DNA from: Zygnema circumcarinatum SAG 698-1b
Taxonomy: Eukaryota; Plantae; Zygnematophyceae
NCBI GenBank assembly: GCA_037447605.1
Contig: CM074809.1
Coordinates: forward strand, 858,689 to 922,688
Direction of reading: 5' to 3'
DNA length: 64,000 nucleotides
A program made the translations under genes and the position numbers. The notes below the pieces were generated by a model. The model was not told the origin of the DNA, searched no databases, and saw nothing but the letters and a program-made list of their open reading frames with translations. The stretch's first letter is position 1; each line of letters opens with the position of its first letter. Below, in pieces: positions 3,001 to 25,290 of this stretch.

Positions 3001-6000
3001 TAGCCGCTTGCCAATTCAGGTCGTCCTGTACGTCCAGAAGCTGCAATGAGTGAACAGTACGTGACAACTGTCGCTTGAAGACCCACCCTTTCAATTTCCT
3101 CCTTCAGCTCTATTGCTTCTTCGAATCGTCCAGCTCGGCTATATGCGTCTATCAAAACGTTGTAAGTGACCACATTTGGTTTACAAAGTTTCCTCTTCAT
3201 GAGGTCTAGTACTTGCCGGGCCCCATCCGGATTTCCTCCTTTACCATATGCATTGATCAGAGACGAATATGAGACGACATCTGGTTCGATGCCTGCCTTT
3301 ATCAACATGTCAAATCGATTCTGTGCTTCTTCAAATTTTCCCCAAGTAGCATATGCATCTATTAGAGTGTTATATGACACTACATTCGGCTCTAATCCAT
3401 CTCTTACTATACAGTCAAACACCTCACGTGCTTGAGCAAATCTCCCTCCTGCAGCATATGAGTGCATGAGAAGGTTATACGTGATAATATCTGGTTTCAA
3501 GCCTGTTCCTGGCTTCTCTTCTTTCATGCGATCGAAGATTTCTAATACATCATCATGGTTTCTTAATTTTGCATGACAGTTCATCACGATGTTAAGAGTA
3601 GCTAACTTTGGCGTTACACCCATAGCCAACATTTTCTTGTAAAAGTCCAAGGCCTTCTGATATTGTTCCCCATTGCGAAAAGCTGTCAAAATGGTGTTAT
3701 AAGTGATAATATCAGGCGGTACTCCAGCTTTCAGCATCCGATCATACATCTCCAGGGCTTGTTCCCATTGTCCAGAAACACCATAAGCGTGAATGAGAAG
3801 GTTGTAGGAGCACCGAGAGGGAGGGATCTGTGCCAGAATAACAGGATCAGGCTACCAATAAGCATGAAATTATCATGTCACATTAGCTTTGGAGCTGCTG
3901 TAGTCATGAAGAGAAATCAGTGGCTTTTTGATTGGTTGTCTCTTGAGCAAAACTACTGCACTGAAGGGTTTCCATATTATGTCAACCATATTCCCTCATG
4001 GTTACAACTCTACTTCACTGCATGCGGGTGTATGTGGGTTCTACTTGCAATACTTCTTATCTGCACATAAATAGTATATGATAGCTCAGAAATTTTCCAG
4101 CTCATGCTATCAATAGTTTTAGGAATTTCCAGCACAGTAAAACTCCCAAGCATACCCCCTGGAAAGTAGTGCAGTTAAGTCCTAGGCATCATCCGGACCA
4201 GGACATTGTGCGATAAACGAACTCAGCATTTGTAAACTCACTCCATTTTGAAGCATAGTCTCGAACACCTTGGCAGCACCATTTGGATCCCTGGCGCGTC
4301 CATGAGCTGAGATAAGGGCACTATATGTCTCCAAATTAGGTGTGCATCTGGTAGGAACACACAAAAGGAGAATCTCAAAAAAACGAAAATGGACAAACGT
4401 TCACGAGCTGACACTGTGCCGAAACATTTCAAAAACTCTGCACATGGTGCGCTGCACGAACAATGACATGATAGAGGTCTGTTTAGATAATAAGTGCAAA
4501 AATCAGGAAAAGGGTAGACCAGTCTGCCTGCATCAACAGATGCAAGAAAAGAGCAAGCAGAGAGAGAATGCCTAAATATATTGATGATGTGCTATAGCGT
4601 GAAAGGGATACATTCAAGTAAACTACCTCCATTCCTGCATCTCATAAAAGAGACGCCGAGTCTGATTGAGGCGCCTATGCCGTGCTGCCAGCTGGCACAG
4701 CATGTTATACATGTCTGTGCGAGCACGGTAACAACGCTGACTCTTAACCCAGTTGAATACCTTCAGGCTCAGTTGCAAGTTTCCTGACTTCGTTATCTCC
4801 TGCAATTCTTAAGTACATTGCAACAGCCACATGATCCAATCAGAAAAGCGAGAGTGATTTTAGACGCAGATACAAGAGAACAAAAGGTTGACAAGGAAAC
4901 GGGGAACGGCCCAATTCCATGTAAAACCTAATATTCTGATCATTCTGGAAGAGGAGTTTGCCGTATAGAAATGTTGACGTGTTATAAAATCTGAGAATAA
5001 TTTCCAGTGTCAAGCCTGAATGAATGAATGAATGCAGTGCAGAATTATGTGCGCAAAATGGATGAAAGAAAGAGAAGAAACACAGGCCAGTAATGGTACA
5101 ATGGCAAGGCAATCGAGCCACAAAAATGGTAGAGAAGACTGGCTTACTAGCGTTGCTTAGAATGCTGTGAAGTCGGAAAAAGAATGTGCCAAGGATAAAT
5201 TATGACGGAGGTGAGGCACAACAAGATTACAACGAGACCAGGAAAGCAGGTGAAAAACAATGGAGTGGAAAAAAATGGCAAGTACCTTCATGAGCACTGG
5301 AAAATTTTGCCGGCTAGTCCGTCCATTCCAGTGGTTTAGGACTCTGTCAACATCCTCGTAATGCTTCAGCTTCATCACCTGGGGAAGAATCTCTGCCACT
5401 TCATTGCTCGCTTCTTGGCCTTCCGTCGCGCGGCTCTGCTGACTTCCATCCCGTATCCTTCGAGATGCTGGCCCTTCTAAAGCCGTCCACCTTCTGACAG
5501 GGAGTTTCCGATCATTCAAATACACCTGAGGAGGAATGAACCTCGCCTTCCGCTGCTTTGAAACTCCATTCGAGTCCTCTCCTGCACTCTCATCCACTCC
5601 CTCAGAACCAGAAAAACTCCTAAGCTCTTCTTCTCTATCGCTATCACTTACATCAATTCCCCAACCACCGTCAACACCGGTTACCCTCGCAGCTTTCGTC
5701 TCTCGAGAAGCGTTCGTTTGGCCCAGATTCTCCTCCTCCAAACTGTTCTCGCTCCCAGCGTCTCGCAAGTCACTCCCCTCCTCGCTCATTCTCCAGCTGT
5801 CTCTCGAGGATTCCTGCCACTTCATGCCTGAAGCTTCCATTTTTCCTCGCCGTTCCGTCGTCCTCCATCCTTCGCTGATATCCTCAGCTTCTGCTGCAAC
5901 GGAGCTTTCGAAGGCCGACAAGGACCGCAAACTCGCGTGCTTAGGCCCCTCACTCGGGCTACCACAGCTAGGCATCGCCATGGCTAGGTCAGCCCTACTT

Positions 6001-10551: not shown

Positions 10552-11526
10552 CTTTTTTTTGTTGTTGAGATCAATGCCACTTCATGTTTGCGACGGTACA
10601 CTTTGACATCCGTTGGTTTGCAGGTTTTGGACCAATGGTTGGCGGCACCTGAACGAGTGGGCACCTTTGCGAGCAGAAAAACCCTAAAAACCCTAAAAGA
10701 CTTGAGGACTCGTTTCTGCTTAGAGTTTGCTTTCCTCCTTTGCGGAAATCCTATCTTTAGTTTTTCAAAGCCTCGTCCAAGTATTGAAAGTCAAGGGCGG
10801 TTGATCCGTCGAGGAATACGAAGAATTGTGGGACTCGGCAGCGCTCCTTTCGGGAGGTGTCTTGCCTGCAGGAGGAGGCTTTGTCTTTCGGGCTGAATTT
10901 ATTTTCAAAAGGTATGCATTCAATTTTGCACCCTTTTCCCATTCTCTATTGGATTGCCTAAACAAGCCTTCAAATTTAGAGGACGTACAAGACGAAAAGT
11001 CTCCACATCAGTCAACGCCAATCTTTAAGCGAAAAATGTGGATATCAAACATGTGAAACTTTGCAACCCACCTCCCTGGCAGCAGTAGGAAGCTTTGAAC
11101 CTGTGAGCATACAAAGGCATTTTCCTCAAGCACACGTTCTTCGCAGAATCCAAACAGCTTCCAAGCTTACTACGAGAAGTTGTCGATCGGTAGCTTTTGA
11201 TTCACCTGCGTAACATAAAAATACTGAATTTTTGAAATGAGTTCTGAGGATGCGCAATTTGACAGCAATATAAAGCCGACTGTAAACAGACGAAATGCTC
11301 GCTAAAAAATCCAATGGCTGTCTCATGAGCGACGTTCTGCCTACATCGATATAAAGTTTAAAGAACATGGCAAGCACTTAATCTTATAGAACCAAAGACA
11401 TAATAAACTGGAGGGATAGGAAGCCTGTCTTGTATAATCTTCAAAATTAATCTTGATTTCGCAATGTCCTATTTCCCCTTAATTGAAGAAGATGCAAACA
11501 CAGAGCATCTCCGCATGTAGCCTTGC

Positions 11527-14500
11527 CTACTTAGGAACGCAGATCATTTTCGTCGACGAAAGGGCCTTCTCTGTGCATTTGAAACCGTTCAATGATTTGA
11601 AAGACTTTTTGGTGAAGAAACGTGTTTTCAGACTCATACACGTATCTCCTGCCTGCAAAGTATACGTGTCTCCCTTGCAGCCAACTGCAGCTCCAAGATC
11701 GCTTCCTTCCAGACACACCTGCAGAAAGCATGCCGGACATAGTTTCAGGATATTACATCAGTTTTTTTCTCTTTAGGGGGAGCAGACTTTCATTTGCGAA
11801 CGGAACCAAATCCAAATGCAATCCCTATCAGTTCTGACCTCCAACCAAAATACACCTTCGTGTGCTTCTGTTGGCCCTAATTTGTATTGAAAGTGTACCT
11901 GCTGCCCAATCAGAGCGCTGCTGCCAGTGGAAAGCATCAATTTGCCACAATTTACGCCGGGATTGAGAGTATAGAATCGCCGAATATCTCCCTCAAGTTG
12001 AGTTTTTATTATGGAGAAGCACGATTCATAGGGCTGGACGGCATAGAACTTTGTGCATGGGCCCGCGTAAGCGAGGGTCCCCCACTGAATACAGACCTGC
12101 AAACAAGTCCACCCTCGAACTTCGAGTTTTTTGTCAAGTTTTATTTTAGCATGAACCGATCGTCGGAAAATTTTCACATGAAAGATTCTTATCAATACCT
12201 TGTCTTAACCACTTATAATTAACCACTTCTAATTCACTGGCTGTACCTGCTGAGACTGCCGAAGCTGCGAGCAGTCCAAGTCAGGATTGGGCGACCCGGG
12301 CCCAAATATTGATGGAACGTTGAAGTATGTAGCGATCGCCTCACACGTGTCACCCTAAAAGGAGGGAAAAGTCAAGCAGTCATCTTGCAGCAGCACTTTC
12401 AAATGTGTCATACATCAAACTCGGAGGAAACTTGAAGACGAGCTTGAACAATAAGAATGGGGAAAAGGAGTTCCAAGGCTACCTCATTGACAGCATACAC
12501 GAGGGAGCAGTTTCTGGAGTTGGTGACATTCACCGTTGTGCCCCCCGGCAAGGGCAATAAGAAATTCAGCTTCTGCAAAATGCATCAAAGATTTGGCATG
12601 AAATTCGCGAGGGGTTGAAGAAACAGTAGCCCGTGGCCATCCCTAGACGCAGAGTTTGCCGAGAGAGGATGTCATAGACTCTCTTACAGACCTTGTTTTG
12701 AGCTAAGAAAACATCTTTGCTGATGCCGTACATAATATATATGTCGTAGCCAGTCATGTTGGCGCCCTCCGGCACAGTAAAGTTCTGCAGCCCGGTTGCT
12801 ATTGCAGCTGAAGGAGACACTCACAGCAAACAAAGCCATGAGTTGGAAAAGGCTCAGAATTTGCCATGAGAGAGCATGAGTTGGGAATGTCTCATAGGTT
12901 GCTCAGAAGGTTTGCTACGATATTTGGGTCACCTTGCAATGCACGTCCTCCACCTTCAGAAGGGACTTACCTTACATCGAAAAAGTACAAAGCTATATAA
13001 CATGACCTTGGTACAGAGAAAACCATGTAGCTGACATGAAAGAAAAAAACTATTCTACATATTCTATATACATATTATACATATTCTATTTTATTCTCTT
13101 CGATTATACTTTTCTATAAACTATGCTCTGTTTTGTCATGGCCCTCACCTGGCACGCATGTGAGGATGCCGTCCGGGGCGGCGGAGGCATACCCCAGCGG
13201 GCAGGCGCAGGCGTATGTGCCAGGTGTCGCCACCGCATTGAGACACGTGCCCACGCCGCAGGGGTTGCTTGCAACGAAGGTACACGGAGAGACTGCTTCA
13301 CAGAAACATCACATACATACATTTGTTTACAAGTGGTTTGTTACATGCAATTGCAACTTACGTGCTATTGGTCGATTTCAAAGAACAGAATCACATTTGC
13401 TGGAATGAAGCTGGTCAGCAATCAATCATGTCGCTCTAGACCTGTGACGTCATCTGATGAGGAAAGTGATATATGGTAAGGTTATATGGTTAAGTTATTC
13501 AAAGTTGGAAATGTATGCTTTTCTAATGGAATTGACCAACTCACGTGGTGCACATGTTTGAGAATTGTCGCTGTTGGTCACTGCCACGAATCCCTCTGAA
13601 CAGTCGCATAAGTTTGTAGCCCCATTCGGAGTACACAGACCATTCCCACATGGGTTCATTGTACCCGGTCCATTTGCCGTCTTCAGAACTGTATTGGCAT
13701 AGCTGTTCCTAAAGCATGGGTCGTTGTCTGCATCCATCAACCAGGAGAGCGAAACCGATTGCTTATTATTACCCTGCTTTAAGCTCAGCACGAACAGGAG
13801 ACCTAGTCTTCGAAGCACAAAGTTGGAAATGTGCATTCTTTGCATTGTTTGCATTGTTTAAACCCTATACAAGGAATCGACGGCATATGGCCTCATTGAC
13901 ACGTAACACAGTTCAGCTGTTGGAATCATTTCGAAGGTTGGACCATTGGATCGGCAACCATTGGATCGGCAACCATTGGACAACCATTGGACAACCATTG
14001 GACAACCATTGGATGGCAATGGTTGGACGTCCAATGGTTCGCAACCATTCGAATGGTTGTTTTGTGCCGGCCGACCATTGGATCCAATGGTTGGCAACCA
14101 TTCGAATGGTTGATCCAATGGTCCGACATGTGAAACATTTATAAGAGAAACCACAAGGGCAGACTTGAACTTAAATGAAGTTCATAGATCTGTGGGATCC
14201 CCCGGTGTCAGATGACATGCGTAACAGACTGCCATGGTAGAAACGTAGATGGTTCGGTGCTTTCTAGTCACTCCTTCTTACCGTATCATCGAGGAATCCT
14301 TGGTAACACTACTCGACTGAGTTCAAGCATCACAAAAAAATGTTAGCAATATCGTAAGCTACGAAGCTTCATGGTTCAGGCTATGCTATAGAGATTCGGG
14401 GTAACCAATTTTGAACTACTTCTGGATAGCTACTAACTTCAATCACCAAGTTGTTATGGAAAATAACGTATTGTGATTAGGGAAGCAAAGTCCTCTCACC

Positions 14501-17500
14501 TGCAGGCTTCACTACCGGCATGAGTGCCGGAAGGCTGTTGATTCCGCATATCCCCAAACCGGCGGATATTTGAAGGCGCATGTAGCCCTGCTCGCCCCAG
14601 TTTTGACCCCACGAGTTGCGGATGATCCAAAAGGGTGGATCCGCACTCAGGTCATAGCCGACCACCACCACGCTGTGATCCACTCCGTTTGAAAAACAAT
14701 CTTCATCGCCAAATACGCCCTGCAGTACAACAAATTTCTCATGAAAAATGTGCTTTTTCTTACAAGTACAGAGATTCCTGCAGATATACACATACAGTCT
14801 CAGTTACGTTAAATGCGTTCAATAGATTTTTGTCACGAGCTCCTTGTATGAACTAAATGAAGGGCCTTATTCTAAATCTTCTGCATTGAGGGTCCAAACG
14901 AGAGTGCAGGATGTTTGTACTCCGTTGTAGTTGATGAAGTTGACACTGCTCGCTTCAATATTCACAATTGCCGGTTGCTGCTGCAGAATGAGCAATAGGC
15001 CCATCCAGCCGTTGAAGGCCACTTGCTCAAACGTTGTAATTTTGAACCTGTTATCACCCTGCAGGCCGCACATTGATCACGAAACGTATATGTAAAAGAT
15101 TCATCTCGACTCAAGCAGAAAAAATCCGCCATCAGAATAGAAATTTCCATTGAAGCCATGTATCCGAAGGATGGTCCTCCTATTGCAAACTGGCTGCTAA
15201 ACCACAGTTCGAAATCCCTTCAAAATGTTTGTGCTACAGTATAGGTCTTCTCGTTCGTCTACGTTCCTGCCCGAGATTCCAAGGTCTACTGGTTCAGTGG
15301 CATCAACATAACATAATAACAATAATGATAACTTTTTCCATCACTATCAGTCCTGTAATTCAACTACGATGCTTTGAATTAGTCCCTCTTACCTGGCCAC
15401 AGCTCGCTTGTCCCGTGAAATTTGAAGCTGAAGTGAGGGCATTGTTGGCGGCATAGTCGAGTGCCTCTTGGGGCCATCCCCCGGACGCGCAGGTCTTGCC
15501 GGCGGGGGAGCAGCTCAGAAGCTGCTGCTCTGCCAACTGCGGGACCGGACTCCTTCCGCCGTTGGCAATGAAAAGTGCGCTTTCAATTGCAGATATTGCA
15601 GCAAAAATCCAACAAGAATCTGCAAGTACTTTGGCACATGCATCAATTTCTAACATGAATGGTGGGTAAGTCTGGTCTGGCCAAAGATGTCAGCTCATAT
15701 GACCCGGGGTAGCTGCTTGCCCGTGTTAGGTAAGAACACCTGTATGGCAAATACCGACTTGGTGTGATGGCTGTCAAGGGTCAAAGAGTATCGTACAGAA
15801 ATTTGGAATGTGTTTTGTTGTGGAGACTATCCACGCTCGTCTCTAAGGAGAAAATACATCCTGAGTTGGGTCTTAGAAATACTGAAGCGGGAGCTAAGCA
15901 CTCACTGCATCTTCCTTGATCCTTCGTGGCTTGGACTGCTCCTTCCACCGTCCAATTCCAGGCGATGGCCACCTGCCACGATGATTTGCCGTTTCTCTGC
16001 CTCAAGTATCCAGCGGTCGCATATCGGAAATATCGGTTCAACTTTGGAGATGTGTTCCTGGGGAGGGTCGTGTTTAAACCGAAACCCCGAGCATCTACAA
16101 ATCAACGGGAGGAATGCAAACCATTAACGAAAACTTTGTTGCAAAACATGCTTAAAGTGAGTACTGAAAGGGTCGGAACGGATTGCATGTCTACCTGGCA
16201 GAGAGGCACTTTGAATGTCTACGTACATAGTGCTCGTGGTATGTAAAGTCTAAATTTCATCAGATTTCCGGTTGTCTGGCTGATTGGGCAGAATCGAGTT
16301 ACGCAATCACAATAGGGAGGAAGTGGAGACCTTACCAAAAGTACAAGTGTTTCCATCTGCAGAGATGTTGTACCCTCTATCACAAGCGCAAGTCGGTTGG
16401 CTTCCGACCGACTTGTAAAAGCAAAATCCGTTACCGCCACAAGCGCCCTGTGGCTGGTTTGCATTGCAGAAGGAGTTGCAGGAGTCGTTGTCTCTTTGTA
16501 TGCTGCATGACTCATCTAATCCAGAAAAGCAGTTCATGTCAATTCCAATGCAGTTCCTCTGCTCGCCGTTCACAAAGATTGAGAGATCCCCCGAAAAGTA
16601 ATTTTGATCGAAGGAAAAAGAGACGTCTTCAAGTAGTCCGAAGTCGAACACCAGTGGGCCGGTGAGCAGATTGTGGGATAACGACCTGAAGGCAGACAAC
16701 TTAACAGTTGACTTCAGACTTCAGCATTCCTCCAACTTCCTGAAGAAGTATTGCCTTCTCCTTTGGCCTCCGATTTTTGTGACTGTTAGTGGACCACGGT
16801 CAAGACTGAAAGGAGACTGCAAACTACAACATTGCTAGCTTACACATTGATCTACCTCATTCCTTATTAAGGTCAAGGAAGTCTTTTTTGAGTTAGCTCA
16901 CATTTGCCGGATGGAGAGGAGCCCTTCAAAGCTTGCTGGAATATTGCCGTTCAGTCGATTGTAGCGTAAGATTCTGCCACATCCACCGCAGAGAGCAGAT
17001 TATTTTCAATCGCTGTTTTATTGCTTATTCAAGAATTCCAAAGGGTTCTTGCGGTTTAACAGAGGAAAATAACTCACAGCACTTTAAGACTCCTGAGTTT
17101 GCCGATTGATGCAGGAATGGCGCCGCTCAAACGATTGTTGCCAATGTCTCTGCATAGCCAGCATGCACCATTTCCATGTTCAACCAAGTTGCAACGTGCT
17201 TCGAATCAAGCACATACGAAGTTCAAATGTGAAAAGCTCGTCACGTTTGCAAATATGCATGAAATGTTCTACGAAGTAGCTCCATGAATTCACTCCTCGT
17301 GTTTTCAAAGACAATGTTAGAACACGTTTCACGCAGACCTCTCAGGGGGCAATGGTCACAGAAACGTTGTTCTTCAGAGCATTCACATACCTACCTTGTC
17401 TTCAATTCTCCGTACATGGAATTATAAGGACAAACAAGAGCGTAACCAAGGTTTCTTGGTTGGCTGTTTTCAAATAGAAATCAATTGTGTAAATCTAATG

Positions 17501-20500
17501 TTCTGAGTTACCTCATTAACAAAACGACACTCGACGAGATTTTGTAAAAACTTCATTCTCTAAGGTTCTATTGAGAACCAGATTGCACTCACAGGCTCGT
17601 AAGACCATTTAGCTTGTCAAAGGACGAGGGGATACTCCCCGTAAGCTGATTAAATGACAAATATCTGCAAGAATCCAGCAATAAACCAAGGTGAATCCAA
17701 TTTATGCGTTAGATCAACAAAGTAGAGATCTTTTCTCTGAGCAGTAACTCGTACTATATCCGCAGGCATCCTTCCAAACACTTCGAGGCTGCAGATTTCC
17801 TTTTTCTGCGCACATGCTTAAGGCAAAAGCGTGCACACCAACCATGAGAAGTCGAGTCGGTACTTACAGATCTGTAAGGGAGGTCAGATTGCTAAAGGAA
17901 GAGGGAATAGGGCCAGTCAACGCGTTATTTGACAATTTCCTGTCACAGGCAATGTCCCCCATTAGAAACGAGTCAGTAGAATAGGGAAGATCCTTGATTG
18001 AAACAAGCATATGAAGACAATGGCGGTTTTTTGTGTAATAGACACAAGAAAAAGACCAATGGCAAAACAGAAACTTGCAAGGGGATAAGCTTTAGAAGCC
18101 GTCGCCACACAATATAGCATCTTCTAAAACGACGAAAATCAGGGAAATCACACATTATTTTCAGATTTCGAAGTCCGCCAAGAGTCTCGGGAAGGATGCC
18201 GGTGAGCCTGTTGACCGACAAGTCCCTGCATGCAGCATTCCATGCGATGTGGATCTGGGAATAAGGAAATGGCAGTTACTGTAACTGAAAAGAATGTAAT
18301 AATGTAAACGGTACAAAAAGTATAAACCGTGGATAAAAATCGTACGGTACATACTTCGGAAATCTGAACATTAAATTCAGCCTATACAGTCAGTGCTCGA
18401 GTCCATTTCTTTGGATGAAATCATCCAGTTCACATTTGAGTGTCGGGGGTCCAGTATGTATACAAAAAAGGTGGTTGGAAAAAAAGTAAAAAGACAGTAA
18501 AACTTGTCTAGATTAACATTGTTGGGAAAGTATAACTTTAGTTGATCCAAGCCTTCACAACTCGAAAAGGTTAAGAGATGCTCACAATTCCTCCAACGTT
18601 GCAAGGTTACCGATTGAAGGTGAAATGGTCCCGTTCAGCTGACTGTTACTCAGCGAACTGCAAAAGCAGACACTCATCGATTAGGTGGCTGCATAGGGGT
18701 TGCCCTTTCTTCCACCGAAGAGGCTTTCCGTCTCAGGAAAACAGGATACATTCATCTTCAGAAGTGGGTATTGCAAACTTCCATCTCATCTCAAAATAAC
18801 GTCACAGTTTGTTTCTTTTTAATCCACACAGATTCCACACCTTAGCAAAATATTGAACTAAGAGATACGAAAGGGATTAACCTTTCCTGGAAAAGGACAC
18901 CAAAGAAGTTCCACGACTGGAGCTGACTTAAGTATTTTTTAGCCATCCTAGTACTCCAATGTATTAAAATTCCAGTTTAAGTGCAGCCATTGTGAAGTTC
19001 CCCTTAACCAGCCACAAAATAAATTGTATCACCGCATACATCAATCAAAGAAAAGGAAGTGGAGGGCCTGGGATTCTCACAGTTTGACCACTAATCTTGG
19101 CTGCGGAGTTGTGCAGTATATACCCCACCAGCTGCATACAGGATAGTTTGGGTTCCAATTCAAGAGAAGCCCAAGGGGATCTTCTGTGATGGTCCGCTTG
19201 AACTCCAAAAGAATGAGAACTGCATCAGAAGGGTCGCCAATATTTAAGAATTAACTTCTTTTATTACAAAACACTTCTCCTTACTCACTCTTTTGAATTT
19301 CCTTACAGAGTTCGCCTACATGTACAAACAAACATTGACATGCATATGCGTCAAAAAGCAAGCTTGGGCGTCTTTTCCCGACCAGCAGAAAGTCTTAAAA
19401 TAGCTCGAGGTCATAGAAGTATTCCAATAGGCAGCTGGGAGACAGGCCCAAGCAGCTTCCGCCCTCCCAAACATTGCACATTTCTCCTACAGTTGGATGG
19501 TTTCTAGCATAGACTTTCACGGAACAAGAGGGCAACGTCGACTAATATCTCTAGGGTCACGTATGTTGATCGGCGACCCTTGCATGCCTTGCATAAATGA
19601 CCGGATAAAGGAAGCTTTTCTGATAATCAGTTCCTTGAACAGAAGCCATACATTGTCAAAGTCCAATCTCAAAACTAGGGACAGCTGCTCAGCTGGACAC
19701 AGTTGACAATTCGTTTCGACATATAATGCCAGACTTCCATAGTCGGATCAACGAGGTCCGGCCATGAAAGAGACCGAAGATGACTTCCTCACCATCTAGT
19801 CCTTAGCTTTGGGCACTTCATTTCCTTGTGGCTAATGCGTTATCCTTGTTTGCTAAAAACTGCAGCAGGTGACTATTTCTTTGAACATATCTCAAAGACT
19901 GCGGTGAAGAGGAATGATTTTCCTTAAGTATTGTATTTTGTTAATGAGGTCCATGCTATGCGATGAAAGGAAGATAAACATTTAAAGACAAAAGACAGCA
20001 ATAGCACATGTCCCCTTTCGATACCTTCTGGAGAAAGTGGAGGCGATGGTGGCCTTGCTGGAAGCCGAGGTGGAGGTGGTCTTGGAGGAGGCCGAGATGG
20101 AGACGGCCTTGAAGAAGGCGAAGATGGAGGTGGTGTAGGAGGAGGCGAAGGTGGAGGTGGTGTTGAAGGAGGCGGAGATGGTTCTGGTTCTGGTGCTGGT
20201 GCTGGTGCTGGTTCTGGTCCTGGTCCTGAATCTGTAGCGCAGTTTGCTGCGAGAGTTCAAGCAAACAAACGAGATCATGAAACTTGTCAAACTCTGAAAA
20301 TGCCCACAGGTCTATCTGGACTAGTGACATTTATCACTAACATTTATCATTTATCATTTATGGGAGTTACTTCCATTGAACCTCATATTACCGTGATTTG
20401 GACACTCGATACACGTGAAACATGAGTCTTCACTCCTTATACGGTAAAATTAGAGTAAAAACATTAGCTATGATTCCGTTGGTGAAGACACAGCACACAC

Positions 20501-21797
20501 GTGTTCAGAACACTCAACCATTTCAGCCACTATCTACTCGAGCAGAATCTAGGAATGAAACCAAGGTATGGTGACATAATTCTAGGGTATGTATGTGTGA
20601 CAGAGCTACTATCTGGAAAAGTGTGGAGCAGGAGCCCAACCTCTACGTAAAACGAGTTTTGGGCGAATTTTCAGTGAACCATTGAACATTGTCTCTAGAG
20701 CTTGACAAAAGCAAGATATCTCATTTCTTAGGTAACGAAGAAGCCATTCAGTGACAGTTTTGCTGATGATCGGTGAGGATTGGCAAGTAGTTTTAAGAAT
20801 CGGATGAATCTAACCCCCATAGTTCATTTATAATAGGTTAAAAAGCCACTGCCTGAGTGATACATGTGAGCGAAAAAGTAATGCACGTCCACAATACATT
20901 AGGTTTCAAGATACTTAAACTTTGGTGCTAGACGAAGTCTATAGTCACTTGACCTCCAGAAGAGACTGTATGATATGCATACAATACTTCAGCAATTTCA
21001 AATGATTTTTGTTGAAGAACAGGTGTCAGGCTTGAGGGACTTAGGGGGGGAGTGCAGGGTTGCGGATAGCGCTCCCCTCTCTTTCTCTCCCAGTGGCGGA
21101 TCCAGGATCTTAGCATAAAATATATGAGATAAAATGAAAAAAAAGTCGACTTTCAAAATCTGAAGGGGGAGGGCTAAGCCCCCCCAACTTGTAGATGTAG
21201 ATCCGCCACTACTCTCTCCCACTCCATCTCTACGTTTCTTTGCCTTTCTCTCCCACTCTCGCCCTCTCTCCCCCTCTGTCCCTCTCTCCATCTCTACCTC
21301 GCTCCCTCCCTCCCTCCCTCCCTCACGTATTATCCTTCTATCCTTCTCCAAGCCCCTCCTACCTCCTCTTCTTCACCGTGCGTGCCCAAAAGTCCACTTA
21401 CAGGATGCTGGGACACAAATCACGCTACTTTTCTTCAAAATAGCGGCTGAGCAACCGAAACCGTTGAGTTTCTTGAAGGTCAATGTCTTTGTGAAGCACC
21501 TCGCCAATGAGACGCAAGTCTCCCTCGGTAAAACACGGTGTTTTTTCCCGTTGCATTTAGCTGATAATCCTGCACCCCCCCGACCAATGCCCCGCAGCCA
21601 CGTCAGCAGCATAATACTGCTGCCGCCGCAGGGTTCAGCGCGCCGCGTCCTCGCCAGGGAGGGAGGGAGGGAGGGTTCAGGGCCGCACCGCGCGCCGGCT
21701 CGACGCCCGCCAGCAACAGCAGCAGAAGCGCCGCCCCCAGGCCCAGGCCCAGGCCGCGGGGCCCCGCACTTGCGCCCGCCATTGCGCCGCCCGCCAT
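11527..21797 (-). CDS. Secreted multidomain LysM-LRR-EGF-papain(C1A)-EGF-EGF-LysMx4 protein (~1074 aa, 22 exons)
   Basis: All introns GT-AG and all phases consistent (3225 nt). Exons: 21797-21689 signal peptide; 21569-21402 LysM; 20246-20025 Pro-rich; 19219-19081 LRRNT (LLEFKRTITEDPLGLLLNWNPNYPVCSWWGIYC); 72-nt LRR exons 18657-18586, 18225-18154, 17939-17868, 17664-17593, 17149-17078, 16973-16902; 16685-16336 LRR cap+EGF; 16094-15906, 15619-15393, 15058-14921, 14719-14500 papain (KDQGRC-NSCW, VDHSVVVVGY, IRNSWG); 13727-13545 and 13292-13149 EGF; 12807-12692, 12572-12483, 12354-12247, 12096-11899, 11718-11527 LysM-like repeats. Confidence 0.85.
13938..14126. repeat. ACCATTGG-motif foldback array (MITE-like) in intron 15 of the LysM-LRR-papain gene
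   Basis: 15-bp terminal inverted repeat (T/C)GGACCATTGGATC with one mismatch; multiple ACCATTGGA direct and inverted copies; two perfect 18-bp palindromes CAACCATTCGAATGGTTG (14042-14059, 14095-14112). Confidence 0.75.
21091..21211. mobile_element. hAT-type MITE (121 bp) in intron 2 of the LysM-LRR-papain gene
   Basis: TIR CAGTGGCGGATC / GATCCGCCACTA; 8-bp flanks TTCTCTCC and CTCTCTCC (7/8 match, TSD). Confidence 0.75.
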
Positions 21798-22358
21798 TGG
21801 CGCCTGAACCCCTGAACCCTTTAACCCCCGAAGCTCCCTCCCTAGACTCCAGAGCAGGCCCTGGATAGGCCGAAGACGGCGACCGTCGTTTGCGGGGGAG
21901 GCGGTTACTGTCGAGTCAACTACAAAACATTCTCACCGTAGTACGGCAGTCTTGTCGTACCGGCAGTCAGGTCGGCCATTTTGTCGCTTAGGATGAGAAC
22001 GGAGATATCGCCATATTGGCGGGGTATCGGGTGCGACCGACAATTCCGGCCGGTACTGCCAGCCGGTCAGCGGGAGGCTGGCTCTCGCACAGATTCGTTG
22101 GCGGCCGCCGCCCAAATTCTGTCGGTCATAACCGATACGTCGGCAAGGTCGCGATATGCTCACATTCGTCGCAAACGACAAACAAGTCTTACAAGCCGCA
22201 GGCTTGCGTCATCATTAGGGGGAGTCAGACCTTGACCATCGCCAAATCAATTTCGCCAGCCCGTCGGGCCAATTCTGCTTTGTACGGCAGGCCTTTTTCG
22301 CCAAAAGTGGACGTTCGACAGGCTCGGGCGCCGCGAATTCAAGAAAGCGATTATTTTA

Positions 22359-23416
22359 GGAAAATGATATAGCGGCCCCACTTTTTGGATATCGGCGCCC
22401 CCTTTTGGGAAAAAATGTACTTTTTTTTTGGCTAATCAACCCCCCACACTTGGATCTTTCGGGAGGAGAGATCTTGTAGACAATCGGATCCCGCGCCTCA
22501 CGCGCAGGATCCGACCGTGCACCGACGTACGGCGCCGCGCATCGCGGCGTGGCCCGCGGGATGCGGCGAGCCTACGGAAACGTTGTCCTCACCTAACCCG
22601 TTTGGGTCAGAGGTTGCCACGTGGCAGTCTGCCATTGAACAGCCCTGCTGCCGGTCCCCCATGCCGAATTGCCGATACAGTGGACCCCCATATTTTCCAC
22701 CTTGTACAGTGCGTCCCCAAGAAATTCGCCCCGATTTTGCCGGAACCACCTTTTTGTACGGTAACTCAATGTTAACGTATTAGGGGTGTTAACCTAACCT
22801 GACCTATTCTCCAATACAAAATCTGTTAATCGAAACGGATTTCAAACATGGGTCACGCTTTTACGCTGTACGGTAAGTACGAATAAAATCTCTAAGTCGT
22901 ACGGTATACGTACGGCACCAATAGGAGCTCGTGTATCTAAATCACGGTACGATACGACACGATACGATACGTACGAACAGACATGAACTCTAACATAATA
23001 CCGCTCGCCTATTGGTAACACGGACCTTATATTTGCAAATTACAATATTTTCGCCCAGTATTTGCCGAAGCCATGGCGAAAATATTATGGGGGTCCACTG
23101 TATCGGCATGGGGGACCGGCAGCAGGGCTGTCCAATGGCAGACTGCCACGTGGCAACCTCTGACCCAAACGGGTCAGGTGAGGACAACGTTTCCGTAGGC
23201 TCGCCGCATCTCGCGGGCCACGCCGCGATGCGCGGCGCCGTACGTCGGTGCACAGTCGGATCCTATCCTGCGCGCGAGGTGCGGGGTCCGATTGTCTACA
23301 AGATCTCTCCTCCCGAAAGATCCAAGGGGGGGGGGGGAGGGGGATGATTAGCCAAAACAATTTTTCCCAAAAGGGGGCGCCGATATCCAAAAAGTGGGGC
23401 CGCTGTATCATTTTCC
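22359..23416. mobile_element. Mutator-like foldback element with ~340-bp TIRs, same family as 9691-10551
   Basis: 22359-~22698 is the reverse complement of ~23078-23416. The terminus GGAAAATGATA...TTTTTGGATAT...CCCCTTTTGGGAAA is homologous to the TIR at 9691. No clean TSD found. Confidence 0.7.
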
Positions 23417-25290
23417 TTTTTATTCATTTATAGTTTTTGTGTTTGTGCTTTTGCTTTTCCTCTGCCCCTCTGGCATTTTTGTACTGTAACCTATTCCGCC
23501 GTACGGACGGGACAGACAGGTTCCGCGGTTTCCGATCCGAATTCTGCAATCGAAATCGTACCTTTTCGCCGGCGAAATCTTTCCATTCCGCCGGCGATGG
23601 TCAAGGTTTGACTCCCCGTAGTAGGGTTGGGGGCACGGTCCCCCTCCGACCCGTGCCCAGGGGCACGTGCCCCCCCCCCCCCCCCCCCCCCTTGGGGGGG
23701 GGGCATGCCCCTTTTTCGTGCCCCGTGACGTGACTGCATTGAGCAATTCAAATCGGCCCCAAAAAGAATATAATATTTTTAAAACGGTACGGTTGAAGGT
23801 ACGGAAAGTACAGATGAATGTACTAAACGTACGAATCAAGGTACAAATGTACGGAAAATATGAAAAGTACGGACAGTACTCGACACAACAATCGTCACCG
23901 GCCCGGGCCCAGTCGTACGAGGTAAGCGTCACGTGACAGGGGGCACGGGGGGGCACGAAAAATATGGGGAAAATTTTTGGAGGCGTGCCCCGGGCACGGA
24001 CGGTCAAAAATGGGGGGCATGCCCCCCCCCCNNNNNNNNNNTAACGTATTAGGGGTGTTAACCTAACCTGACCTATTCTCCAATACAAAATCTGTTAATC
24101 GAAACGGATTTCAAACATGGGTCACGCTTTTACGCTGTACGGTAAGTACGAATAAAATCTCTAAGTCGTACGGTATACGTACGGCACCAATAGGAGCTCG
24201 TGTATCTAAATCACGGTACGATACGACACGATACGATACGTACGAACAGACATGAACTCTAACATAATACCGCTCGCCTATTGGTAACACGGACCTTATA
24301 TTTGCAAATTACAATATTTTCGCCCAGTATTTGCCGAAGCCATGGCGAAAATATTATGGGGGTCCACTGTATCGGCATGGGGGACCGGCAGCAGGGCTGT
24401 CCAATGGCAGACTGCCACGTGGCAACCTCTGACCCAAACGGGTCAGGTGAGGACAACGTTTCCGTAGGCTCGCCGCATCTCGCGGGCCACGCCGCGATGC
24501 GCGGCGCCGTACGTCGGTGCACAGTCGGATCCTATCCTGCGCGCGAGGTGCGGGGTCCGATTGTCTACAAGATCTCTCCTCCCGAAAGATCCAAGGGGGG
24601 GGGGGGAGGGGGATGATTAGCCAAAACAATTTTTCCCAAAAGGGGGCGCCGATATCCAAAAAGTGGGGCCGCTGTATCATTTTCCTTTTTATTCATTTAT
24701 AGTTTTTGTGTTTGTGCTTTTGCTTTTCCTCTGCCCCTCTGGCATTTTTGTACTGTAACCTATTCCGCCGTACGGACGGGACAGACAGGTTCCGCGGTTT
24801 CCGATCCGAATTCTGCAATCGAAATCGTACCTTTTCGCCGGCGAAATCTTTCCATTCCGCCGGCGATGGTCAAGGTTTGACTCCCCGTAGTAGGGTTGGG
24901 GGCACGGTCCCCCTCCGACCCGTGCCCAGGGGCACGTGCCCCCCCCCCCCTTGGGGGGGGGGCATGCCCCTTTTTCGTGCCCCGTGACGTGACTGCATTG
25001 AGCAATTCAAATCGGCCCCAAAAAGAATATAATATTTTTAAAACGGTACGGTTGAAGGTACGGAAAGTACAGATGAATGTACTAAACGTACGAATCAAGG
25101 TACAAATGTACGGAAAATATGAAAAGTACGGACAGTACTCGACACAACAATCGTCACCGGCCCGGGCCCAGTCGTACGAGGTAAGCGTCACGTGACAGGG
25201 GGCACGGGGGGGCACGAAAAATATGGGGAAAATTTTTGGAGGCGTGCCCCGGGCACGGACGGTCAAAAATGGGGGGCATGCCCCCCCCCC
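22773..25290 (+). repeat. 1.26-kb tandem duplication flanking a 10-N gap (probable assembly artefact)
   Basis: 22773-24031 equals 24042-~25290 (offset 1269) apart from homopolymer lengths; Ns at 24032-24041. Confidence 0.85.

What the first reader, a model, noticed from the sequence alone, without database searches (positions are those of the whole stretch)
11527..21797. Secreted LysM-LRR-EGF-papain-LysM fusion: a candidate extracellular recognise-and-cut protein
Seen in sequence: 22 GT-AG exons join in frame into a ~1074-aa protein with a signal peptide, one N-terminal LysM-like domain, an extensin-like Pro-rich stalk, a plant LRRNT plus 6-7 LRRs, three EGF-like modules, a C1A cysteine protease and four C-terminal LysM-like repeats. 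No transmembrane segment or kinase is visible. Established: LysM binds GlcNAc polymers (chitin, peptidoglycan), plant extracellular LRRs are ligand-binding surfaces, and papain-like proteases act in apoplastic defence. In land plants these are normally separate proteins (LysM-RLKs/LYMs, LRR-RLPs, PLCPs). Inference: this is a single soluble sensor-effector that docks on microbial walls or the alga's own matrix and proteolyses a target, or alternatively acts in mating or wall remodelling. I know of no characterised protein with this architecture. The ORF track shows it only as scattered fragments.
Basis: partly seen in the sequence, partly recalled or inferred. Interest (0 to 1): 0.92.

Follow-up and report, generated by a model that had tools for sequence, protein, structure and literature searches.

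The report
Secreted LRR–papain–LysM protease gene
This is a real, expressed 22-exon algal gene for a secreted cysteine protease fused to protein-binding (LRR, EGF) and sugar-binding (LysM) modules. It belongs to a large, unstudied gene family found so far only in the algae closest to land plants.

Summary
On the minus strand, 22 exons with canonical GT-AG introns (11527-21797) give one 1074-aa ORF. The order is: signal peptide, LysM-like module, Pro-rich stalk, LRRNT, 7-8 LRRs, EGF, C1A protease with Gln/Cys/His/Asn intact and no I29 prodomain, two EGFs, four LysM modules. No transmembrane segment is present.

Spliced RNA contigs confirm 12 junctions (introns 9-20), which join LRR, EGF, protease, EGF and LysM. 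An 1864-nt contig has the length expected if it reaches the 5' end. The last intron and exon (LysM 4) have no RNA cover and rest on homology.

The architecture is not unique. Dozens of unnamed proteins in Closterium, Mesotaenium and an unnamed transcriptome align collinearly from LRRNT to the stop codon. One Closterium clade carries an added legume-lectin domain. No paper describing the family was found. Specific to this gene are the N-terminal copy of the last LysM module and the Pro-rich stalk.

All four C-terminal module columns match solved LysM domains as family profiles. This gene's own modules stay below Pfam's threshold. A sugar-tethered extracellular protease is the likely mechanism. 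A defence role is inferred, not shown.

The scan noted the same family on two other pieces of this genome.

The parts
11527..21797 (-). Whole coding region: 22 exons, 21 GT-AG introns, 3225-nt CDS, 1074 aa
   Evidence: model. (12 junctions in RNA contigs). (single blastp HSP, aa 205-1073, to P0183).
21689..21797 (-). Exon 1: ATG and signal peptide (aa 1-37), the only hydrophobic stretch in the protein
   Evidence: KD scan. (X1 word share 0.54, fits exon 1 + exon 2 spliced). Intron 1 (119 nt) is needed to join the frames.
21402..21569 (-). Exon 2: N-terminal LysM-like module (aa 41-92), a duplicate of the last C-terminal module
   Evidence: local alignment score 100, z = 14.2, 0 of 2000 shuffles. 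No Pfam hit on its own. Absent from all homologues inspected.
20025..20246 (-). Exon 3: Pro-rich stalk (aa 93-166, 50% Pro, Ser/Thr-Pro3-4 motifs)
   Evidence: Splice phases fit exons 2 and 4. Closterium P0177 and P0182 also carry a Gly/Pro-rich region before the LRRNT.
19081..19219 (-). Exon 4: plant-type LRR N-terminal cap (aa 168-203)
   Evidence: PF08263 LRRNT_2, E = 1.9e-7, 31.7 bits (cutoff 20.7).
16902..18657 (-). Exons 5-10: six 72-nt exons in one phase, one 24-residue LRR each (18586-18657, 18154-18225, 17868-17939, 17593-17664, 17078-17149, 16902-16973)
   Evidence: Exons 9 and 10 are joined in RNA contigs. The contig's loose end beyond 17149 maps to exon 8 at 17593-17622.
16336..16685 (-). 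Exon 11: last LRR units, cap and EGF1 (aa 426-472) in one exon
   Evidence: Continuous ORF. (both flanking junctions). (cEGF 20.4 bits, sub-threshold). (homologues found with this exon).
15906..16094 (-). Exon 12: 47-aa linker holding the family-wide motif N..FR[HY]AS.GF (FRYATAGY at aa 496), then the start of the protease with oxyanion-hole Gln533. No I29 prodomain.
   Evidence: motif conserved, also directly after the signal peptide in LRR-less members. (no Pfam family). (AF2 pLDDT only 60-68 over the motif in homologue P0183).
14500..15619 (-). Exons 13-15: C1A protease core. Cys539 (15612-15614), His673 (14675-14677), Asn693 (14615-14617).
   Evidence: Peptidase_C1, 47.2 and 67.3 bits. (residues). 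(junctions). (homologue's domain matches mature ginger protease II, actinidin and papain, E down to 3e-38).
13149..13727 (-). Exons 16-17: EGF2 (aa 756-790) and EGF3 (aa 795-838)
   Evidence: exon 17 PF00008 EGF 26.7 bits (cutoff 21.5), exon 16 only 10.5 bits; junctions 13727/14500, 13292/13545 and 12807/13149.
11899..12807 (-). Exons 18-21: LysM modules C1 (aa 847-898), C2 (901-951) and C3 (959-1016)
   Evidence: junctions down to 12094/12245; contigs stop at 11953. Family profiles with the window exon as first row against solved chains: C1 1.8e-10, C2 7.6e-16, C3 8.6e-10 to the chitinase-A LysM chain 5bum_A.
11527..11718 (-). Exon 22: LysM module C4 (aa 1025-1074) and the stop codon. Not covered by RNA contigs.
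   Evidence: homologues end at the same ...C[VL]P position. Pfam LysM 16.8 bits (cutoff 20.9); profile 9e-7 to 5bum_A. AF2 pLDDT 65, and most Foldseek matches are LysM structures but all have E above 0.8.

Best explanation
The locus is one expressed gene for a secreted, soluble, modular papain-type (C1A) cysteine protease. It belongs to a family found so far only in zygnematophycean algae.

The family has a conserved core: a short N-terminal segment with the motif FR[HY]AS.GF, the C1A domain, two EGFs and four disulfide-type LysM modules. Heads are added in front of this core. Here the head is LRRNT, 7-8 LRRs and EGF1, preceded by two additions specific to this gene. These are a copy of LysM module 4 and a Ser/Thr-Pro-rich stalk.

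Proposed mechanism (inferred):
1. The protein is secreted.
2. The five LysM modules hold it on GlcNAc-containing glycans such as chitin, peptidoglycan or related oligosaccharides.
3. The LRR-EGF head binds a protein or peptide partner.
4. The tethered protease cuts proteins nearby.
5. With no I29 prodomain, latency and folding would depend on the short conserved segment or on the head.

I favour foreign, microbial surfaces as the target (about 0.45) over the alga's own wall or mating structures (about 0.3).

Shown here: gene structure, splicing, domain identities, intact catalytic residues and family membership. Inferred: secretion, glycan binding, activity, regulation and biological role.
For: - 22-exon model with one stop and all introns GT-AG.
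- Spliced contigs across introns 9-20, and an 1864-nt contig linking the protease to the LRRs with a further 951 nt upstream.
- Exons 1 and 2 are present in the same RNA run at the share expected for spliced RNA.
- Single-HSP collinear alignments from LRRNT to the C-terminus with P0183 (E = 0, 39.6% identity) and with P0053, P0052 and P0047. P0183 is a 'complete' ORF from another species' transcript assembly, so it is independent support for one mRNA.
- Pfam on homologues gives LRR + Peptidase_C1 + EGF + LysM.
- Gln533, Cys539, His673 and Asn693 are present.
- No transmembrane segment.
- LysM profiles hit solved LysM domains at 9e-7 to 7.6e-16.
- The motif is conserved in 50 family members and follows the signal peptide directly in LRR-less members.
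Against: - Exon 22, the end of exon 21 and intron 21 have zero RNA depth in four runs. Two contigs stop at 11953.
- The window's own LysM modules do not reach Pfam's threshold.
- The AF2 model of module C4 is low confidence, and no Foldseek match is significant.
- The proposed pro-segment has only pLDDT 60-68 in the homologue model.
- Variant letters at 14606-14657, and a different exon-16 sequence in run X3, show that a near-identical allele or paralogue is also expressed. Some contigs may therefore come from that copy.
- No experiment or expression condition bears on ligand, activity or role.
- SignalP and DeepTMHMM could not be run.
Confidence: 0.68

Rival explanations
1. Same protein, but its job is endogenous. 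It would remodel the alga's own wall or mucilage glycoproteins, or act in conjugation (wall loosening, protoplast release, mate recognition), with LysM and LRR binding self matrix components.
For: - The Ser/Thr-Pro-rich stalk resembles wall hydroxyproline-rich glycoproteins.
- The one algal C1A protease with a reported physiological context, Volvox VcPap-11, is induced by the sex pheromone (PMC2474614).
- The gene is expressed in ordinary culture RNA runs from several studies, without any known challenge.
Against: - As general knowledge, not tested here, no GlcNAc polymer is known in zygnematophycean walls for LysM to bind.
- The large copy number and divergent LRR and LysM modules (28-36% identity, against 48-51% for the protease and EGF2-3) fit varied ligands better than a housekeeping role.
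- An L-type lectin was added in one expanded Closterium clade.
Confidence: 0.27
2. The LRR-EGF head, together with the N-terminal LysM and stalk, is a large pro-region that is cleaved off after secretion. The working enzyme would then be only the protease-EGF-LysM core, and the LRR would have no targeting role in the mature enzyme.
For: - Family members exist that have only the core directly after a signal peptide (P0184, P0189, P0178).
- Alignments of lectin-bearing members to this protein start exactly at the linker, aa 473-474.
- No I29 prodomain is present.
Against: - The short motif-bearing segment is kept even when a head is present, which suggests it is the pro-like element rather than the head.
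- Heads are conserved and expanded, which argues for a function of their own.
- No processing site is evident.
Confidence: 0.2
3. The model wrongly joins neighbouring genes, or its 5' or 3' end is wrong. Exons 1-3 could belong to another transcript, or the transcript could end before exon 22.
For: - There is no RNA depth on 11400-11952, and contigs end at 11953.
- With intron 1 retained, as suggested by word shares of 0.84-0.91 in runs X11-X15, the signal-peptide frame stops and an in-frame ATG at 21611 would start a protein with no signal peptide.
Against: - The contig extends 951 nt upstream, against 926 nt for exons 8 to 1.
- The X1 word share of 0.54 fits spliced exons 1 and 2.
- Exon 22 is collinear with the C-terminal end of 12 aligned homologues and stops where they stop.
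- Exon 2 is a significant duplicate of exon 22's module.
Confidence: 0.07
4. The protein is a non-catalytic binder or decoy that uses an inactive protease fold.
For: Some paralogues in Closterium and Mesotaenium have Ser in place of the catalytic Cys (P0184, P0189, P0178, P0186, P0052).
Against: This gene keeps Gln533, Cys539, His673, Asn693 and Trp695, as do most family members.
Confidence: 0.05

Closest known systems
Unnamed LRR-EGF-(legume lectin)-Peptidase_C1-EGF-LysM proteins of Zygnematophyceae. Examples: Closterium GJP35581.1 (P0011), GJP74067.1 (P0041); Mesotaenium endlicherianum ME000211S03199 (P0047), ME000166S01720 (P0053); EukProt transcript TRINITY_DN227 (P0183).
   Same: Collinear from LRRNT to the stop codon. 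Same short motif before the protease, same two EGFs and four LysM modules. Signal peptide present and no transmembrane segment.
   Different: Only 31-40% identical overall. This gene has an extra N-terminal LysM copy and a Pro-rich stalk. It lacks the L-type lectin domain of the main Closterium clade. None of these proteins is characterised.
Land-plant apoplastic papain-like cysteine proteases (RD21, Rcr3/Pip1, C14; MEROPS C1A)
   Same: Cathepsin-L/papain-type catalytic domain with the same catalytic residues. The homologue's domain matches plant papain-like structures at E about 1e-35 to 1e-38. Both are secreted.
   Different: No I29 prodomain and no granulin tail. Instead there is an LRR-EGF head and an EGF-LysM tail. 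In land plants the recognition modules are separate proteins.
Bacterial LysM-NlpC/P60 cell-wall endopeptidases (T. thermophilus 4uz2/4xcm, B. subtilis LytE 8i2e)
   Same: Tandem LysM modules tether a thiol peptidase to a GlcNAc-containing polymer. Their LysM domains are hit by this family's profiles.
   Different: A different peptidase family (C40, not C1A). LysM is N-terminal there. They have no LRR or EGF, and their substrate is the peptidoglycan stem peptide.
LysM-carrying chitinases of ferns, horsetails and Volvox (PrChiA 4pxv, EaChiA 5bum, Volvox 5k2l)
   Same: These are the best solved matches to all four C-terminal module profiles (9e-7 to 7.6e-16). The principle is the same: LysM plus a secreted hydrolase.
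   Different: The catalytic domain is a glycoside hydrolase, not a protease, and they carry only one or two LysM modules.
Plant LysM receptors (CEBiP, CERK1, LYM1/3) and LRR receptor-like proteins or kinases
   Same: Disulfide-type LysM modules in tandem, and a plant LRRNT_2 with 24-residue LRRs. CERK1, Ecp6 and CEBiP appear among the weaker profile and fold matches.
   Different: No transmembrane helix, GPI signal or kinase. The output domain is a protease on the same chain.
Volvox carteri pheromone- and wound-induced C1A protease VcPap-11 (Amon et al. 1998, as cited in PMC2474614)
   Same: An algal C1A protease outside the cathepsin B/F/H/L groups, linked to extracellular signalling. From my memory only, it carries chitin-binding repeats.
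   Different: The original paper could not be read. No Volvox relative surfaced in the word-indexed searches, so homology and domain content are unverified.

Membership tests
C1A papain-like cysteine protease (Pfam PF00112) | Peptidase_C1 profile match above the curated cutoff | tested here: met
   Exon pieces score 47.2 and 67.3 bits against a 20.7-bit cutoff.
C1A papain-like cysteine protease (Pfam PF00112) | Catalytic Gln19/Cys25/His159/Asn175 (papain numbering) | tested here: met
   Gln533, Cys539, His673 and Asn693 lie in the motifs DQGRCNSCW, VDHSV and IIRNSWG.
C1A papain-like cysteine protease (Pfam PF00112) | I29 (cathepsin-L type) inhibitory prodomain before the mature domain | tested here: not met
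   No PF08246 hit on exon 12 or any other exon, nor on the family members scanned with Pfam here. It is also absent from the precomputed Pfam lists. Only a 47-aa linker precedes the domain.
C1A papain-like cysteine protease (Pfam PF00112) | Thiol-dependent, E-64-sensitive endopeptidase activity | not testable with these tools
   Needs recombinant or native protein.
LysM domain (PF01476) | LysM profile match above the curated cutoff on this protein's own modules | tested here: not met
   Only C4 scores, at 16.8 bits against a 20.9-bit cutoff. The N-terminal module and C3 give nothing, and the pieces covering C1 and C2 gave no LysM hit either.
LysM domain (PF01476) | Homology of each module to accepted LysM domains | tested here: met
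   Column profiles with the window exon as first row hit solved LysM chains: C1 1.8e-10, C2 7.6e-16, C3 8.6e-10, C4 plus the N-terminal module 9e-7. In P0053, modules 2-4 pass Pfam at 25.7-28.1 bits. The N-terminal module is homologous to C4 (z = 14.2).
LysM domain (PF01476) | beta-alpha-alpha-beta fold | tested here: inconclusive
   The AF2 model of exon 22 has pLDDT 65 and one helix is missing. Eleven of 17 Foldseek matches are LysM structures, but all have E above 0.8.
LysM domain (PF01476) | Binding of GlcNAc-containing glycans | not testable with these tools
   Needs pull-down or a glycan array.
Plant extracellular LRR receptor-like protein or kinase | LRRNT_2 cap plus 24-residue plant-type LRRs | tested here: met
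   LRRNT_2 scores 31.7 bits. There are seven regular 24-residue units plus a degenerate eighth.
Plant extracellular LRR receptor-like protein or kinase | Transmembrane helix (RLP), with or without a kinase domain (RLK) | tested here: not met
   No hydrophobic 19-residue window outside aa 11-38. No kinase hit was found. It is therefore not an RLK or RLP.
Zygnematophycean LRR-EGF-C1A-EGF-LysM family (uncharacterised) | Collinear alignment over head, protease and LysM tail | tested here: met
   One HSP, aa 205-1073, to P0183 (E = 0). Similar alignments to P0053, P0052 and P0047. The window protein groups with P0183, P0190 and P0272 at 99% local support (FastTree only).
Zygnematophycean LRR-EGF-C1A-EGF-LysM family (uncharacterised) | Conserved N..FR[HY]AS.GF segment about 20 residues before the protease start | tested here: met
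   FRYATAGY at aa 496, with the mature-like start at aa 516.
Zygnematophycean LRR-EGF-C1A-EGF-LysM family (uncharacterised) | L-type (legume) lectin domain between EGF1 and the protease. This defines only the main Closterium clade. | tested here: not met
   RNA junctions 16094/16336 and 15619/15906 leave no room for it. Mesotaenium members and P0183 lack it too.
Extensin / hydroxyproline-rich glycoprotein | Ser-Pro3-5 repeats with Tyr cross-linking motifs | tested here: inconclusive
   Three SPP+ motifs plus TPPP(P) and 50% Pro over aa 93-166, but no Tyr in the segment. It is stalk-like rather than a cross-linking extensin.

The most novel reading that the evidence does not exclude
The closest algal relatives of land plants run a kinase-free extracellular surveillance system. 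The three ectodomain types that land plants use in pattern-recognition receptors (LRR, LysM, and L-type lectin in Closterium) are fused directly to a protease. Ligand binding would displace the short FR[HY]AS.GF segment and switch on proteolysis at the microbial surface. The family's expansion and its swapped heads, including this gene's extra LysM and stalk, would then be the algal counterpart of receptor diversification.
Probability: 0.15. Interest if true: 0.85.

Novelty: new variant of a known kind. Interest (0 to 1): 0.6.

Why it matters
Zygnematophyceae are the sister lineage of land plants, so their cell-surface proteins bear on how plant immunity and wall biology began. Here, recognition modules that land plants attach to kinases are attached to a secreted protease. 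The family has dozens of members per genome and no name or paper that I could find.

A protease that folds and stays latent without the usual I29 prodomain would also interest protease biochemists.

This gene offers a compact, RNA-supported, lectin-free member to clone. Closterium, which can be transformed (from my own knowledge, not checked here), offers paralogues for genetics. If the function proves to be ordinary wall turnover, the finding is still a useful annotation of a large unnamed family.

Tried and rejected
- One gene or two: rejected 'two genes' on the spliced contigs.
- Own protein in public sets: phmmer of exon 11 against 1.84 billion representatives found only homologues of 31-49% identity. 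The product is therefore not deposited, and no whole-protein id was available.
- Whole-protein Pfam, SignalP, DeepTMHMM and AF2 on the spliced sequence could not be run, because the tools take only references. I worked exon by exon and through homologues.
- Other copies in the window: tblastn of the model found none outside 11.5-21.8 kb.
- Literature: nine searches combining Zygnematophyceae, Closterium, Mesotaenium, Volvox, LysM, papain, LRR and lectin found no description of the family. PMC10834447 does not mention it. Amon et al. 1998 is not held.
- ESM Atlas look-alikes gave only generic papain clusters.
- A search for the protease-LysM core outside Zygnematophyceae fell straight to ordinary I29-bearing papains. 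That search relies on shared 5-residue words, so a blank is weak evidence.
- Mini-prodomain idea: AF2 on the homologue's linker plus protease gave a confident protease (pLDDT 89-97) but only 60-68 over the motif. This is inconclusive, and coordinates could not be inspected.
- A first alignment for module C2 used the wrong reading frame (A3). It was discarded and redone (A5).

Full report
**Observation**

The gene lies on the minus strand. Three-frame translation shows the expected coding pieces in order. A model of 22 exons gives a 3225-nt CDS with one terminal stop and a 1074-aa product. After shifting ambiguous cuts by 1-2 nt, all 21 introns are GT..AG. Six consecutive LRR exons are 72 nt each and share one phase.

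**RNA evidence**

Public runs of the same organism hold the locus. Contigs from four runs were laid on 11400-17399 and show 12 joints with CT..AC ends on the + strand. These define exons 9 to 21:
- 17078-17149
- 16900-16973
- 16336-16683
- 15906-16094
- 15392-15619
- 14920-15057
- 14500-14718
- 13545-13727
- 13149-13292
- 12692-12807
- 12482-12572
- 12245-12353
- 11953-12094

Translating the joined pieces gives one open frame running from LRR to LysM.

One X1 contig of 1864 nt carries exon 13 (catalytic Cys), exon 12, exon 11 (EGF1 and LRR), exon 10 and exon 9. It then continues for 951 nt. Its first 30 further letters map to exon 8. Exons 8 to 1 of the model sum to 926 nt, so the contig length fits a transcript reaching 25 nt upstream of the ATG.

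Run X1 holds 0.54 of the sampled words of 21380-21830. About 0.57 is expected if exons 1 and 2 are present and the 119-nt intron 1 is absent. Other runs hold 0.84-0.91, which fits added low-depth unspliced RNA. Low-depth contigs on other introns were seen.

That test fails, so this is one gene.

**Weak points of the model**

- No contig lies on 11400-11952. Two contigs, in X2 and X4, end exactly at 11953 inside exon 21. Intron 21 and exon 22 are therefore unconfirmed by RNA.
- Different studies lose identity to the window at different places. X3 loses it at the exon 15/16 boundary, where its contig continues with a variant of exon 16. X1 loses it at 12545.
- A cluster of variant letters sits at 14606-14657.
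- I read this as a near-identical allele or paralogue with mosaic divergence. Some contigs may come from that copy.
- Exon 22 is nevertheless well supported by homology. In an alignment with 12 relatives, the fourth LysM module is present in every one. Ten of the 12 end within a few residues of where this protein ends.

**Domains**

| Feature | Result |
|---|---|
| LRRNT_2 | 31.7 bits, above cutoff |
| Peptidase_C1 | 47.2 and 67.3 bits, above cutoff |
| EGF on exon 17 | 26.7 bits, above cutoff |
| EGF1 and EGF2 | sub-threshold |
| LysM, module C4 | 16.8 bits, cutoff 20.9 |
| LysM, other modules | no hit |

- Catalytic Gln533, Cys539, His673 and Asn693 are in place.
- No I29 prodomain is found.
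- A hydropathy scan finds only the N-terminal signal-like stretch (aa 11-38), so there is no transmembrane helix and no hydrophobic C-terminal tail.
- The protein has 49 Cys and 12 N-glycosylation sequons.
- Residues 93-166 are 50% Pro, with Ser/Thr-Pro3-4 motifs.

**Are the LysM-like modules LysM?**

Yes, at the level of the family.
- In the Mesotaenium homologue P0053, modules 2, 3 and 4 pass Pfam's cutoff. In P0183, module 2 does.
- I built a profile for each module column, with the window's exon as first row and about 36 homologues. Each profile hits solved LysM domains over their full length. The best hits are the chitinase-A LysM chains 5bum_A and 4pxv_A. Ecp6, YkuD, NlpC/P60, CERK1 and Volvox chitinase also appear.
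- E-values are 1.8e-10 (C1), 7.6e-16 (C2), 8.6e-10 (C3) and 9e-7 (C4 with the N-terminal module).
- The N-terminal module is a clear duplicate of C4: score 100, z = 14.2, 0 of 2000 shuffles.
- An AF2 model of exon 22 is weak (pLDDT 65). Its Foldseek matches are mostly LysM structures, but none is significant.

**The family**

- phmmer with exon 11 against 1.84 billion representatives did not find the window's own product. It did find proteins with the same LRR-cap-EGF junction.
- Pfam shows these carry LRR, EGF, Peptidase_C1, EGF and LysM, many with a legume-lectin domain before the protease.
- They come from several Closterium strains and from Mesotaenium endlicherianum. All are 'hypothetical' or 'unnamed'.
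- Wider searches list more than 100 members from Closterium, Mesotaenium and an unnamed EukProt transcriptome, plus a Spirogloea protease-LysM protein.
- The window protein aligns in one HSP (aa 205-1073) with P0183, a complete transcript ORF from another species, and likewise with Mesotaenium P0053, P0052 and P0047.
- In a quick FastTree tree of the protease-to-C-terminus region, it groups with the transcriptome proteins (99% local support). The lectin-bearing proteins form one Closterium clade. The lectin therefore looks like a later insertion. This rests on a fast method with long branches.
- Homologues start with a signal peptide followed directly by the LRRNT, or by a Gly/Pro-rich region in two Closterium proteins. 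None has an N-terminal LysM.
- Earlier notes of this scan (s1-350932, s1-339062) report the same family, including lectin-bearing and tandem members, on other pieces of this genome. I did not check those loci.
- No second copy lies in this window.

**A conserved segment in place of the prodomain**

- All members share N..FR[HY]AS.GF about 20-25 residues before the mature-type start.
- In LRR-less members it follows the signal peptide directly.
- In lectin-bearing members, similarity to this protein begins exactly at this linker.
- I propose it is a minimal pro-segment. AF2 on the homologue's linker plus protease gave a confident protease but only pLDDT 60-68 over the motif, so this remains an idea.
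- The protease domain itself is ordinary papain/cathepsin-L type.
- A few paralogues have Ser for the catalytic Cys. This gene does not.

**Mechanism and role**

Shown: an expressed gene for a secreted-type, transmembrane-free chain that joins a plant-type LRR head, a catalytically intact C1A protease and five LysM modules.

Inferred from what these domains do elsewhere: LysM modules tether the enzyme to GlcNAc-containing glycans, as in bacterial LysM-NlpC/P60 wall peptidases and LysM-chitinases. The LRR-EGF head binds a protein partner, and the protease cuts nearby proteins.

Three observations lean towards varied, probably foreign, ligands:
- The protease and EGF2-3 are the most conserved parts (48-51% mean identity). 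The LRR and LysM C1, C3 and C4 are the least (28-36%).
- The copy number is high.
- The heads are swapped between members.

No data here separate defence from wall or mating functions.

**Novelty**

All parts are known domain types, and tethering a hydrolase by binding modules is a known principle. The particular combination, the missing I29 prodomain and the lineage-wide expansion are undescribed as far as nine full-text searches show. I rate it a new variant of a known kind.

**Surroundings**

- A PPR gene lies at 2613-3749.
- ORFs at 42-47 kb include a family-B DNA polymerase exonuclease domain.
- A large inverted repeat lies 0.6-1.6 kb upstream of the ATG.

Noticed in passing
window 22358-23417: Large inverted repeat. 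Arms of about 300 nt (22358-22667 and 23103-23417) are 93-98% complementary with a 435-nt spacer. It lies 0.6-1.6 kb upstream of the gene's ATG. It is either a hairpin-forming element or a transposon with terminal inverted repeats. The same ORF translation appears on both strands.
   Followed up: partly
window 13930-14140 (inside intron 15): Short tandem repeats (units of 11 and 15 nt, ACCATTGG-type). RNA contigs pile up here at depths up to about 740 in single contigs, with many loose ends and odd joints. This indicates a dispersed repeat transcribed from elsewhere in the genome, not part of this mRNA.
   Followed up: partly
window 14606-14657, and the exon 15/16 boundary at 14500: RNA contigs carry a cluster of variant letters. 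Run X3 continues past exon 15 into a different version of exon 16 (NDPCFTRNY instead of NDPCFRNSY). Runs lose identity to the window at different exons. This suggests a near-identical allele or paralogue with mosaic divergence, possibly from gene conversion.
   Followed up: partly
window 42120-46674 (+): A run of long ORFs (674, 421 and 327 aa). The last has a family-B DNA polymerase exonuclease domain (PF03104, E = 9e-12). This may be a Polinton/Maverick-like or virus-derived insertion.
   Followed up: no
window 2613-3749 (-): An intron-less 378-aa ORF full of PPR repeats (PPR_2, E = 8.5e-86). It is an ordinary organelle RNA-binding protein gene about 8 kb downstream of this gene's stop codon.
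   Followed up: no
Homologues P0184, P0189, P0178, P0186 (Closterium) and P0052 (Mesotaenium): These family members have Ser instead of the catalytic Cys (C.SSW or CGASW). They may be pseudo-proteases or Ser-nucleophile variants within the same family.
   Followed up: partly
window 21570-21688 (intron 1) and ATG at 21611: If intron 1 is retained, the signal-peptide frame stops at 21606-21608. An in-frame ATG at 21611 could then start a protein without a signal peptide. Runs X11-X15 hold 0.84-0.91 of the words of this region, so some unspliced RNA exists.
   Followed up: partly
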